64,000 nt of DNA, taken from NCBI RefSeq assembly GCF_035084215.1, contig NC_090357.1, positions 4,960,001 through 5,024,000 of the forward strand, written 5' to 3'. The stretch comes from Heptranchias perlo. Taxonomy: Eukaryota. Of the stretch, positions 56,564 through 57,965 are shown in pieces; position 1 is the first letter of the stretch; each line of letters starts with the position of its first letter. A program made the translations under genes and the position numbers. The notes below the pieces were generated by a model that was not told where the DNA came from, searched no databases, and saw only the letters and a program-made list of their open reading frames with translations.

Positions 56564-56689
56564 CATTGTTACATAAATTTCAACTTCATCAGTCTTTGAG
56601 TCCTTATTTTTCTTTCCCTCCATGGGTTTATTTTCTCTGTCTCTCTGGAGCGGAGGTCTCCTGGTCACAGTGACGTAGCGGTCTGTCTC
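56564..56689 (-). CDS. JAML: JAML-like cytoplasmic tyrosine-motif exon, copy B
   Basis: AATCAG|GAG ... ATG|GTAAGA, 126 bp, phase 0-0, encoding ETDRYVTVTRRPPLQRDRENKPMEGKKNKDSKTDEVEIYVTM. Confidence 0.72.
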
Positions 56690-56799
56690 CTGATTGTTGG
56701 TGAACACAACTGTTTAATCAGCTGTAATTGGTTTTTCACACTTCCTTCACTTTCTAATTTAATCTCTCCCAATCCCCTCTTGCTTCTCCAACGCCTCAT

Positions 56800-57150
56800 T
56801 GGGTCAAGACAGTGTGGAACTCAACAGTCTGGACCAGTAAGGTCCCAGGTTCCATCATTGGTCTGTGCTGACTCAGCTGATTTCAGCTGGGGCAGAATTA
56901 GGGCCACACATTTGACCTCTGAGCCACTGTCGGGGGGAGCATCAGCCAGGGTACCTGCTCCTGATCTAGTGATTCCTTCTGGAAAATACAAGCTTGGGAA
57001 TATCAGGTAAAAGCAGGATCAGGCTCAGCTGTTACACCCTCCCTGGTCGGATAACCTGCCAACATTCACTGTTTAGGCTCAGACATGAAGAACGACTGCC
57101 TCAGTGAGATACTGAAGCCCGTCGGCACCTGTGGACCAGGACCTTGAGGA
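56800..57150 (+). mobile_element. Ancient SINE (AmnSINE2-like)
   Basis: GGTCCCAGGTTC...GGTCTGTGCTGA...GCTCCTGATC...AGGCTCAGACATGAAGAA. Fragments recur at ~9495-9650, 18870-19060, 43075-43290 and 62170-62370. The family name is from memory. Confidence 0.55.
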
Positions 57151-57399
57151 TGGGAGAGAGGAGAGAGAAGAGAAAACTGAAACAATAAATCAAAAATCTC
57201 TGAATAACGGGATTGTCCCCAACACCACCCAACAGTTGAGGAAGCCAAACAAAATATGATTAGCAGATAGTTCTCAAAAGTTTTTGACATATAAATGGAC
57301 AACAAATCCAAGGATTTTATGTAGTGAATAACCCACTCCACCACGTCACATCACCGTACCAAAAACAATTAAGGACAAGAAAAGACAATTGGGCTAATA

Positions 57400-57965
57400 A
57401 AGCCCATCCCTCCAGTACCCTAACTCTGCCATCAGAGAACATCCCAACTCTCCCATTAAAGCCCATCCGTCCGGTACCCCAACTCCCTCAAAGCCAATCC
57501 CTCCAGTACCCTAACTCTTCCATTGAAACGCATTCCGCTAGTACCCTAACTCTCCCATTAAAGGAATTATTACCCCAATCTTACCATTGTTACATAAGTG
57601 TTATCTTCATCAGTCTTCGATTCCTTATTTTTCTTTCCCTCCATGGGTTTATTTTCTCTGTCTCTCTGGAGCGGAGGTCTCCTGGTCACAGTGACGTAAC
57701 GGTCTGTCTCCTGATTGTTATTGAACACATCTGTTTAACCTTTCGACCCTTCACTACCCCAACTCTCCCATTGAAGTCCATCTCTCCAGCATCCCAACTT
57801 TTCTATTGACGACCATCTCTCCAGTACTCTAACTCTCCCATTAAAACTCATCACTTCAATACCCTAACTCTTCCATTGAAACCCATTCCCTTGGTACCCT
57901 AACTCTCCCAATGAAACTCAACCCTCCAGTACTCTAACTCTCCCATTGATGACCATTCTGCAGTA
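57400..57965. repeat. ~39-bp degenerate minisatellite (CCAGTACCCTAACTCTCCCATTAAAGCCCATCCCT-like), split by the duplicated exon cassette
   Basis: Units visible at ~57400-57560 and ~57750-57965. Confidence 0.85.
57585..57710 (-). CDS. JAML: JAML-like cytoplasmic tyrosine-motif exon, copy A
   Basis: AATCAG|GAG ... ATG|GTAAGA, 126 bp, phase 0-0, encoding ETDRYVTVTRRPPLQRDRENKPMEGKKNKESKTDEDNTYVTM. Confidence 0.72.

What the first reader, a model, noticed from the sequence alone, without database searches (positions are those of the whole stretch)
56564..57710. Tandemly duplicated YxxM signalling exon in a shark JAML-like receptor
Seen: two 126-bp phase 0-0 exons 1021 bp apart (57585-57710 and 56564-56689), both with intact AG/GT sites and open frames, differing at 7 of 126 nt. 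Each encodes YVTV and a terminal YVTM. Known: mammalian JAML costimulates gamma-delta T cells through one YMxM motif that recruits PI3K, and the p85 subunit has two SH2 domains that prefer paired pYxxM. Inference: including both exons gives two YxxM motifs 42 aa apart (four tyrosines in all), and the symmetric phase allows isoforms with 0, 1 or 2 copies, a possible splice-tunable PI3K docking system. The ORF track does not show these exons.
Basis: partly seen in the sequence, partly recalled or inferred. Interest (0 to 1): 0.8.

Follow-up and report, generated by a model that had tools for sequence, protein, structure and literature searches.

The report
Duplicated tyrosine-motif exon in shark receptor
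A sevengill shark immune-type receptor gene carries two copies of a small exon that encodes tyrosine signalling motifs; both copies are spliced into its mRNA, so the duplication is real, but what it does is still a guess.

Summary
Two 126-nt phase 0-0 exons (57710-57585 and 56689-56564, minus strand) differ at 7 of 126 nt. Both have AG/GT sites, and each encodes YVTV and YVTM.

Spliced contigs from four runs of one sample join mini-exon>A, A>B and B>last exon at exactly these borders.

The genome is Heptranchias perlo. RefSeq already models the gene as 'myelin protein P0-like', with isoforms of 327/326 aa (A+B) and 285/284 aa (B only).

The 42-aa module is conserved in 15 of 15 elasmobranch species examined. 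Thirteen have one copy. Two copies occur only in H. perlo and Mustelus asterias, and a module tree indicates independent duplications. Zero-copy isoforms are modelled in two other sharks.

Copy A is the derived one: a 178-bp block dropped in register into a 35-bp minisatellite.

The 'JAML-like' label is only partly supported. The gene sits next to SCN2B, as human JAML does, and mouse JAML is the best solved match. But myelin P0 scores about the same per domain, and there is one V domain, not two.

PI3K docking is plausible (Met at +3 is invariant) but untested. A companion note of this scan on the same stretch (s1-882926) had already proposed the minisatellite insertion.

The parts
61177..61346 (-). 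First half-exon of the single V-set Ig domain, including the end of the signal peptide. Exon 1, holding the start codon, lies outside the window.
   Evidence: Acceptor and donor located. The translation is a substring of RefSeq isoforms at residue 16. Weak V-set match alone: 13.3 bits, E 0.097. The peptide that starts the RefSeq protein is not found in the window.
60319..60535 (-). Second half-exon of the V-set domain
   Evidence: Pfam V-set 36.3 bits against a cut-off of 26, E 6.8e-09. Best PDB matches are mouse JAML D1 at 33.8 bits and myelin P0 at 34.2 bits. Substring of the RefSeq isoforms at residue 72.
58561..58729 (-). Stalk, transmembrane and juxtamembrane exon
   Evidence: Contig pieces lie on 58561-58730 in 4 of 4 runs, and the donor joint is at 58561. 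A hydrophobic stretch is visible in the translation.
58419..58455 (-). 37-nt mini-exon with a tandem (NAGNAG) acceptor. Starting at 58455 adds one Ser; starting at 58452 omits it.
   Evidence: Joint 58455>58561 is seen in 3 of 4 runs. RefSeq pairs of 327/326 and 285/284 aa differ by that Ser. Sequence read.
57585..57710 (-). Exon A, the derived copy of the 42-aa two-tyrosine module (YVTV ... YVTM)
   Evidence: Joints mini-exon>A in 4 of 4 runs and A>B in 3 of 4 runs. Present in RefSeq X1 and X2, absent from X3 and X4.
57561..57738 (-). 178-bp duplicated block A: 28 nt of intron, exon A, then 24 nt of intron
   Evidence: 94% identical to 56540-56717. Sharp ends. Lies between two in-register units of the 35-bp minisatellite.
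56564..56689 (-). Exon B, the parental copy of the module, present in all four RefSeq isoforms
   Evidence: Joint B>last exon in 4 of 4 runs. Substring of X1 to X4.
56540..56717 (-). 178-bp block B, in unique-sequence flanks
53218..53313 (-). Last coding exon: 31 codons plus a TAG stop. The 3' UTR continues at least to 52900.
   Evidence: Acceptor at 53313 is used in 4 of 4 runs, and contigs run on to 52900, the edge of the laid stretch. Stop codon and AATAAA at 52926 found.
57394..57560 (.). 35-bp minisatellite, the part on the 3' side of block A in gene orientation
57739..57957 (.). 35-bp minisatellite, the part on the 5' side of block A in gene orientation
25945..26166 (-). Neighbouring gene SCN2B, second half-exon of its V domain (synteny marker, not part of the receptor)
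   Evidence: 78.8 bits, E 1e-21 to human sodium channel beta-2 chains.

Best explanation
SHOWN.
- The window holds most of a Heptranchias perlo gene for a type I membrane protein. It has one V-set Ig domain (encoded by two half-exons), one transmembrane helix and a tail of about 135 aa.
- The tail is built around a phase 0-0 cassette exon of 42 codons. This exon carries two tyrosine motifs, Y[VFL][TI]V and YV[TA]M, conserved across sharks, rays and skates.
- In H. perlo, a 178-bp block was copied about 1 kb upstream. The block holds that exon plus 28 nt of upstream and 24 nt of downstream intron, enough for its own splice signals.
- The copy landed cleanly inside a 35-bp minisatellite in the preceding intron.
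- The new copy (A) and the old one (B) are spliced in series. This gives a tail with four tyrosines, two of them in YVTM.
- RefSeq models also skip A.
- The same exon appears twice in the Mustelus asterias protein. The module tree says that arose separately.

INFERRED.
- The module is a phosphotyrosine docking unit.
- The C-terminal YVTM fits the pYxxM preference of the two SH2 domains of the PI3K p85 subunit, which is how mammalian JAML signals.
- The N-terminal YVTV would bind a different SH2 protein.
- Duplication doubles docking valency, and cassette skipping sets it (2 or 1 here; 1 or 0 in other sharks).
- The copying was probably repair of a break in the minisatellite with nearby sequence as template.

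My odds: the structure and its expression about 0.95; SH2 docking in general about 0.55; p85/PI3K specifically about 0.35.
For: Anatomy.

Expression: joints with GT..AG ends (read on the minus strand) at 58455>58561 (3 of 4 runs), 57710<58419 (4 of 4), 56689<57585 (3 of 4) and 53313<56564 (4 of 4). Three intron bins have zero depth in all four runs.

Database models: X1 327 aa and X2 326 aa contain A+B; X3 285 aa and X4 284 aa contain B only. Every exon translation is an exact substring of these isoforms.

Conservation: the module is found in 15 of 15 species. Val at +3 of the first Tyr and Met at +3 of the second are invariant in 17 of 17 modules.

Independent origin: the two Mustelus modules form a clade (98/95) sister to Scyliorhinus. 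The two H. perlo modules sit outside the galeomorph clade (99/96).

Insertion: a minisatellite unit ends at 57739 and the next begins at 57560. The best cross-array register is 3, which equals 178 mod 35. There is no homology beyond the block.

Zero-copy isoforms: Cetorhinus 241 aa and Rhincodon 254 aa.

PI3K precedent: passages of PMC7982423.
Against: - No phosphorylation, binding or cell-type data exist for this protein.
- The runs are labelled only 'RNA? (a guess)' and come from one sample. They are contigs, so isoform ratios cannot be read, and rare forms are dropped.
- Exon-versus-flank divergence between A and B is similar (5.6% versus 7.7%). There are 2 synonymous and 5 non-synonymous changes, roughly dN/dS 0.6 on tiny counts. 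Selection on copy A is therefore not demonstrated.
- Four of the seven exon differences cluster just upstream of the second tyrosine of A.
- The JAML motif described in print is YMxMxPxxP. Here YVTM is not followed by PxxP.
- Two copies in only 2 of 15 species argues against a general need.
- The Mustelus duplication is known only from a predicted protein.
Confidence: 0.55

Rival explanations
1. Neutral passenger. The 178-bp block was pasted into a fragile minisatellite by repair synthesis. It is included in mRNA only because it brought its own splice sites and keeps the frame. The second module adds nothing that selection sees.
For: Exon and flank divergence are alike (7 of 126 versus 4 of 52). 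There are 2 synonymous and 5 non-synonymous changes. 13 of 15 species manage with one copy. RefSeq X3 and X4 skip A.
Against: Both tyrosine motifs, the frame and both splice sites of A are intact after about 6% divergence. The same exon was duplicated a second time in Mustelus. The A+B form is the one assembled in the RNA contigs.
Confidence: 0.3
2. The two tyrosines of a module work as a pair for a tandem-SH2 phosphatase (SHP-2 or SHP-1), as in the relative MPZL1/PZR. The receptor would then be inhibitory or SHP-2-scaffolding, not a PI3K costimulator.
For: The V domain belongs to the MPZ/MPZL/JAML/SCNB group: MPZL1 53.3 bits and P0 63.6 bits to the profile. The first motif, YVTV, has the hydrophobic +1 and +3 residues that SHP-2 N-SH2 prefers (recalled specificity). 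The two tyrosines are 34 aa apart in every module.
Against: The canonical ITIM needs S/I/V/L at -2. That position is D, N, G, E or C in 16 of 17 first motifs (V only in Rhincodon) and E, N or A in the second. Met at +3 of the second motif is invariant in 17 of 17, which is the p85 signature rather than the ITIM one.
Confidence: 0.15
3. The motifs are YxxPhi sorting signals for clathrin adaptors, controlling surface level rather than signalling.
For: Both YVTV and YVTM fit YxxPhi. Relatives of the P0 family use a tyrosine motif for trafficking (recalled).
Against: Adaptor signals tolerate any bulky hydrophobic residue at +3. Here V and M are each invariant in 17 of 17 modules across sharks and batoids. 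Acidic residues precede the second Tyr in most species, as kinases favour (the preference itself is recalled).
Confidence: 0.1
4. Assembly artefact: only one copy exists, and the second is a collapsed or expanded haplotype.
For: An assembly gap exists elsewhere in the window (37014-37213), and block A lies in a repeat that is hard to assemble.
Against: Contigs built from separate runs contain the A>B junction in 3 of 4 runs, and contig pieces match each copy with 0 other letters. RefSeq models a 2-copy protein.
Confidence: 0.02

Closest known systems
Mammalian JAML (AMICA1), CAR-binding costimulator of epithelial gamma-delta T cells
   Same: It is the top solved-structure match: 83 bits to the protein and 108.8 bits to the family profile. 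The gene lies next to SCN2B on the same strand, and human order is SCN4B, SCN2B, AMICA1, MPZL3 (passage of PMC2956734). The tail has a YxxM motif, and JAML recruits p85 through YMxMxPxxP (passage of PMC7982423). The top named ESM Atlas cluster is 'junctional adhesion molecule-like' (0.97, a lead only).
   Different: It has one V domain, not two. Per domain, the match to JAML D1 (48.4 bits) is no better than to myelin P0 (46.6 bits). The motif is YVTM without an adjacent PxxP. The tail has a second conserved tyrosine motif. CAR binding is unknown. No bony-vertebrate relative was retrieved by the word-index searches.
Myelin P0 family (MPZ, MPZL1/PZR, MPZL2, MPZL3)
   Same: Single V-set domain plus one transmembrane helix. 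Profile scores are 63.6 bits (P0) and 53.3 bits (MPZL1). RefSeq calls this gene 'myelin protein P0-like' and some orthologues MPZL2 or MPZL3. MPZL1 also signals through two tail tyrosines (recalled).
   Different: The tail exons hit no Pfam family, including the P0 C-terminal domain, at E up to 1. The tyrosine motifs are not ITIMs. The chromosomal slot next to SCN2B is JAML's in human, not MPZL3's.
Receptors and adaptors with paired YxxM sites for the two SH2 domains of p85 (for example BCAP with four YxxM; CD28/ICOS-type single sites)
   Same: Cytoplasmic YxxM. With both exons there are two YxxM on a flexible tail. p85 has two SH2 domains, and their engagement raises PI3K activity (introduction passage of PMC7982423; BCAP's four YxxM from the same paper).
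   Different: Here the second site comes from duplication of a whole cassette exon, and its inclusion can in principle be set by splicing. Binding is untested.
Multiplication of signalling motifs by exon duplication (for example the three ITAMs of CD3 zeta; recalled)
   Same: A signalling-motif exon is repeated in tandem within one tail.
   Different: The case here is recent, lineage-specific, a different motif type, and made by insertion of a 178-bp block rather than an ancient fixed architecture.

Membership tests
V-set immunoglobulin domain (Pfam PF07686) | Match to the V-set profile above the curated cut-off | tested here: met
   The second half-exon alone scores 36.3 bits against a cut-off of 26. 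PF07686 is precomputed on all orthologues listed.
JAML (AMICA1) orthologue | Two tandem Ig domains in the ectodomain | tested here: not met
   RefSeq isoforms go from the single V domain straight to the stalk and transmembrane exon, and the exon translations are consecutive substrings. Only one V-set pair of half-exons lies between 61346 and 58729.
JAML (AMICA1) orthologue | V domain closer to JAML than to paralogues (MPZ, MPZL, SCNB) | tested here: inconclusive
   JAML D1 48.4 bits, D2 34.2 bits, P0 46.6 bits. JAML's higher total comes from its two domains. No tree could be built because no bony-vertebrate sequences were retrievable.
JAML (AMICA1) orthologue | Conserved position next to SCN2B | tested here: met
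   An SCN2B exon at 26166-25945 lies on the same strand. Human order comes from the PMC2956734 passage. The side toward MPZL3, MPZL2 and CD3E is outside the window.
JAML (AMICA1) orthologue | Tail motif YMxMxPxxP that recruits p85 | tested here: inconclusive
   YVTM is present in every module but is followed by R/H-S/A-F/I, or by the next module, not by PxxP. The motif as printed is in PMC7982423.
JAML (AMICA1) orthologue | Binds CAR/CXADR | not testable with these tools
   This needs a binding assay.
Myelin P0 proper (MPZ) | P0 C-terminal domain in the tail | tested here: not met
   Exons A, B and the last exon match 0 Pfam families at E up to 1.
Class IA PI3K docking site (pYxxM) | Y-x-x-M in a cytoplasmic, accessible segment | tested here: met
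   YV[TA]M ends 17 of 17 modules, downstream of the transmembrane exon.
Class IA PI3K docking site (pYxxM) | Tyrosine is phosphorylated and binds p85 SH2 domains | not testable with these tools
   This needs phosphopeptide binding or co-immunoprecipitation.
ITIM ([S/I/V/L]xYxx[I/V/L]) | Hydrophobic or Ser residue at -2 and I/V/L at +3 | tested here: not met
   First motif: -2 is D, N, G, E or C in 16 of 17 modules. Second motif: +3 is M in 17 of 17.
Alternatively spliced cassette exon | Symmetric phase, plus transcripts with and without the exon | tested here: inconclusive
   Phase 0-0 is shown. Inclusion is shown in contigs. Skipping is seen only in RefSeq models: A skipped in X3 and X4, and the single module skipped in Cetorhinus X3 and Rhincodon X4. 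No skipping joint is among the 15 listed of 34.

The most novel reading that the evidence does not exclude
The gene is the ancestral, single-V form of JAML. Its cassette exon is a PI3K (p85) docking unit whose copy number is under recurrent selection. Two distant shark lineages independently doubled it, and splicing dials the tail between 0, 1 and 2 units. That would give a graded costimulatory signal matched to the two SH2 domains of p85.
Probability: 0.1. Interest if true: 0.6.

Novelty: new variant of a known kind. Interest (0 to 1): 0.35.

Why it matters
If the module docks PI3K, this is a natural series of 0, 1 and 2 docking units on one receptor. It arose twice in sharks and could show how signal strength is tuned by exon copy number and splicing. 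It would also place a JAML-type costimulator at the base of jawed vertebrates.

Apart from function, it is a clean example of how a new exon is born. A 178-bp block carrying only an exon and its splice signals was pasted into a minisatellite 1 kb away and was used at once by the spliceosome.

The duplication itself is already captured in RefSeq gene models. No paper describing it was found among the listings.

Tried and rejected
**Module search across the big library.** The 42-aa exon A was searched against 1.84 billion representatives. Three hits had E up to 0.001.
- P0001 is a 1477-aa translated tandem repeat that matches only the charged middle of the query, in 28 weak stretches. I reject it as spurious.
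- The other two hits are the gene itself and its Mustelus orthologue.

**Reaching bony-vertebrate relatives.** I wanted JAML, MPZL2 and MPZL3 sequences for a V-domain tree, and ran three word-index searches: P0002 (12 hits), the 10-sequence profile A1 (15 hits at E up to 1e-5) and the V region of P0018 (4 hits). All hits were elasmobranch. The prefilter, not the score, is the limit, because mouse JAML and P0 score well in the PDB searches. Setting 1e-5 was stricter than it needed to be. No tree across families could be made.

**Genomic loci of other species.** I therefore could not look for unannotated second copies or for the Mustelus block boundaries.

**Larger tandem duplication.** blastn of the flanks found nothing beyond the 178-bp block. 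The only strong hit was a trivial self-overlap of my chosen ranges.

**Register test.** The best residue class is 3 (0.453) and the next is 24 (0.427), because the lower array has irregular units. The two units that touch the block are in register by eye. 'CR1-derived' (note s1-882926) was not tested.

**Exon 1.** The peptide that starts the RefSeq protein is not in the window.

**Depth.**
- In run X2 the 77-nt piece shared by A and B has depth 108.4. The A>B contig has 52.5 and the B>last contig 55.9, which would fit most transcripts having both copies.
- The tool warns that contig depth cannot rank parts of a gene, so I give this no weight.

**Rows left out of the module count.**
- P0013 is a 239-aa model lacking the transmembrane exon.
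- P0019, P0020, P0023, P0026-P0030, P0033, P0034, P0036 and P0037 were listed but not fetched.
- P0035 and P0032 were fetched and have one module each, but come from the same species or cluster as counted rows.

**Papers.**
- Read as passages only: PMC7982423, PMC2956734, PMC12237671, PMC9041367, PMC7916592.
- Seen as search listings only. One search was badly framed (min_terms 2) and useless.
- Supplements were not opened. Supplementary Table 2 of PMC7982423, which lists YxxM motifs, may give the exact JAML motif.

**Not attempted.** Structure prediction was not run; the tail is expected to be disordered, and the Atlas model has mean pLDDT 0.56. The joined spliced protein was never built or searched. 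Exons were searched one by one, and full-length searches used only database proteins returned by the tools.

**Recalled, not from any call.** SH2 and kinase specificities other than pYxxM, MPZL1 signalling, P0 trafficking, CD3 zeta ITAM origin, and shark substitution rates.
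Full report
**What is in the sequence**

On the minus strand, 57710-57585 (exon A) and 56689-56564 (exon B) are two 126-nt open segments.
- They differ at 7 of 126 positions.
- Each is preceded by CAG and followed by GTAAGA.
- Each encodes 42 residues, with YVTV near the start and YVTM at the end.

They are the core of a single 178-nt direct repeat, 57561-57738 versus 56540-56717, at 94% identity and 1021 nt apart. The repeat has 11 differences: 7 in the exon and 4 in the 52 flanking nt. 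Homology stops sharply 28 nt upstream and 24 nt downstream of the exon. blastn finds nothing further. Its one inaccuracy is that an ORF list at 50 aa does show both segments.

**The gene**

The following exons lie on the same strand:
- two half-exons of one V-set domain (61346-61177 and 60535-60319);
- a stalk and transmembrane exon (58729-58561);
- a 37-nt mini-exon (58455-58419);
- exons A and B;
- a last coding exon from 53313 to a TAG stop at 53220-53218.

The phases fit: the mini-exon ends in phase 0, A and B are 0-0, and the last exon starts in phase 0. The second V half-exon passes the Pfam V-set cut-off (36.3 bits against 26). The tail exons match no Pfam family.

**Are both copies used?**

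One search for runs gave 14 rows. The four best (X1-X4) come from one sample, are labelled 'RNA? (a guess)', and hold 0.12-0.21 of the sampled words. I laid them on 52900-58850. Their contigs carry joints with GT..AG ends, read on the minus strand, exactly at the predicted borders:

| Junction | Runs with it |
|---|---|
| transmembrane exon > mini-exon | 3 of 4 |
| mini-exon > A | 4 of 4 |
| A > B | 3 of 4 |
| B > last exon | 4 of 4 |

Three intron bins have zero depth in all four runs. This behaviour is that of cDNA. So both copies are spliced, in series, into one mRNA.

There are limits. It is one sample. Contigs drop rare forms and cannot give ratios. Only 15 of 34 joints were printed, and no A-skipping joint is among them.

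**Identity in databases**

A full HMMER scan with exon A returned the gene's own product. It is RefSeq XP_067827020.1, 'myelin protein P0-like isoform X4' of Heptranchias perlo, the sharpnose sevengill shark. Four isoforms are on record:

| Isoform | Length | Modules |
|---|---|---|
| X1 | 327 aa | A+B |
| X2 | 326 aa | A+B |
| X3 | 285 aa | B only |
| X4 | 284 aa | B only |

The 1-aa pairs differ by a Ser, from a tandem acceptor at 58455/58452. Each exon translation from the window is an exact substring of these proteins, at consecutive positions. In the 327-aa form the tail tyrosines are Y217, Y251, Y259 and Y293. The duplication is thus already in public gene models. No paper on it appeared in the searches (listings only).

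**Relatives and age**

Word-index searches found orthologues only in elasmobranchs. I extracted the module from 15 species. Thirteen have one copy. H. perlo and Mustelus asterias (318 aa) have two.

The first motif has Val at +3 and the second has Met at +3 in 17 of 17 modules.

A maximum-likelihood tree of the 17 modules follows the species tree.
- Batoids separate from sharks.
- The H. perlo pair sits outside a galeomorph clade (99/96).
- The Mustelus pair forms a clade (98/95) sister to Scyliorhinus.

Two independent duplications is the simplest reading. An old duplication kept alike by gene conversion, with second copies unannotated elsewhere, cannot be excluded.

Cetorhinus X3 (241 aa) and Rhincodon X4 (254 aa) are models that skip the single module entirely. 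So the exon is treated as a cassette in other sharks as well.

**How copy A arose**

Block A lies inside a 35-bp minisatellite. On the minus strand a repeat unit ends at 57739, directly before the block. The next unit begins at 57560, directly after it. The best register between the two array parts is 3, which equals 178 mod 35.

Block B lies in unique sequence and is the copy present in all isoforms. I conclude that B is parental and A is an insertion of a 178-bp copy into a pre-existing array. This agrees with the companion note s1-882926. Its 'CR1-derived' part was not tested.

Repair of a break in the minisatellite using sequence 1 kb away as template is my inference for the mechanism. The block carries just enough intron, 28 nt upstream and 24 nt downstream, to supply its own splice signals.

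Since the copying, there have been 2 synonymous and 5 non-synonymous changes (about 25.5 synonymous and 100.5 non-synonymous sites). Four changes cluster just before the second tyrosine of A. These counts are too small to show selection either way.

**Is it JAML?**

For:
- Mouse JAML is the best solved match: 83 bits to the protein and 108.8 bits to the 10-species profile.
- The next gene on the same strand is SCN2B, 78.8 bits to the human chains.
- In human the order is SCN4B, SCN2B, AMICA1 (JAML), MPZL3, MPZL2, CD3E (passage of PMC2956734).
- The top named ESM Atlas cluster is 'junctional adhesion molecule-like', with MPZL2 and P0 clusters at the same score (a lead only).

Against:
- JAML's lead comes from having two domains. 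Per domain it is 48.4 bits (D1) against 46.6 bits for myelin P0.
- The shark protein has one V domain.
- RefSeq names for the orthologues vary among JAML-like, P0-like, MPZL2, MPZL3 and SCN2B-like.

I file it in the MPZ/MPZL/JAML/SCNB group of V-set proteins. It sits in the positional slot of JAML, but orthology is unproven.

**Function**

A passage of PMC7982423 states two things:
- p85 has two SH2 domains that bind pYxxM, and this binding both localises and activates PI3K;
- CAR-clustered JAML recruits p85 to a YMxMxPxxP motif.

The shark YVTM fits YxxM. The invariance of Met at +3 in 17 of 17 modules favours a p85-type reader over a general hydrophobic signal. The PxxP part is absent.

The first motif is not an ITIM, because -2 is not hydrophobic in 16 of 17 modules. 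Its reader is unknown.

I therefore take the module as an SH2 docking unit, with odds of about 0.55, and its C-terminal site as a PI3K site, with odds of about 0.35. Duplication doubles the sites, and cassette skipping sets their number. Rivals are a neutral passenger exon, SHP-2-type signalling as in MPZL1, and adaptor-sorting signals. An assembly artefact is nearly excluded by the contigs.

**Verdict**

This is a correct and careful observation. The duplication is real, expressed, recent and lineage-specific. Its origin is unusually clear, and there is an apparently independent parallel in Mustelus. It is already present in RefSeq models. The family label is only partly right, and the signalling story remains inference. 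Interest is moderate-low (0.35). I class it as a new variant of a known kind.

Noticed in passing
window 58452-58461 (minus strand): The mini-exon has a tandem NAGNAG acceptor. Contigs use 58455, which adds a Ser, while RefSeq has both forms. Isoform pairs differing by 1 aa are also listed for Heterodontus, Cetorhinus, Rhincodon, two Chiloscyllium species and Scyliorhinus canicula, so the wobble may be conserved. I checked at sequence level only for H. perlo and Rhincodon.
   Followed up: partly
window 23184-28059 (minus strand): This is the SCN2B gene. The second V half-exon at 26166-25945 scores 78.8 bits to human SCN2B. ORFs at 27607-28059 and 23184-23384 look like its first V half-exon and its transmembrane and tail exon, by eye only.
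   Followed up: partly
window 31941-41816: About 10 kb of low-complexity Pro/Ser/Leu/His-coding-looking simple repeat contains the assembly gap 37014-37213. It lies between SCN2B and the receptor gene. The gap was left alone.
   Followed up: no
window 55806-56451: A 26-bp-period minisatellite of at least 24 units lies in the intron downstream of exon B. It is unrelated to the 35-bp array around exon A.
   Followed up: no
window 53895-55486: Contig depth is very high (up to about 660,000) at 95-99% identity, over an intronic stretch with reverse-transcriptase-like ORFs. This is an abundant transcribed retroelement family, not part of the gene.
   Followed up: no
window 59622-60281 and 60600-60950: Two further tandem arrays lie in the intron between the V-domain and transmembrane exons. 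The second has a unit of about 65 bp that also occurs at 30738-31350.
   Followed up: no
P0013 (Chiloscyllium punctatum, 239 aa): This database model of the orthologue lacks the transmembrane exon. It joins the V domain to the module through a short unrelated stretch. It is either a mis-model or a soluble isoform.
   Followed up: no
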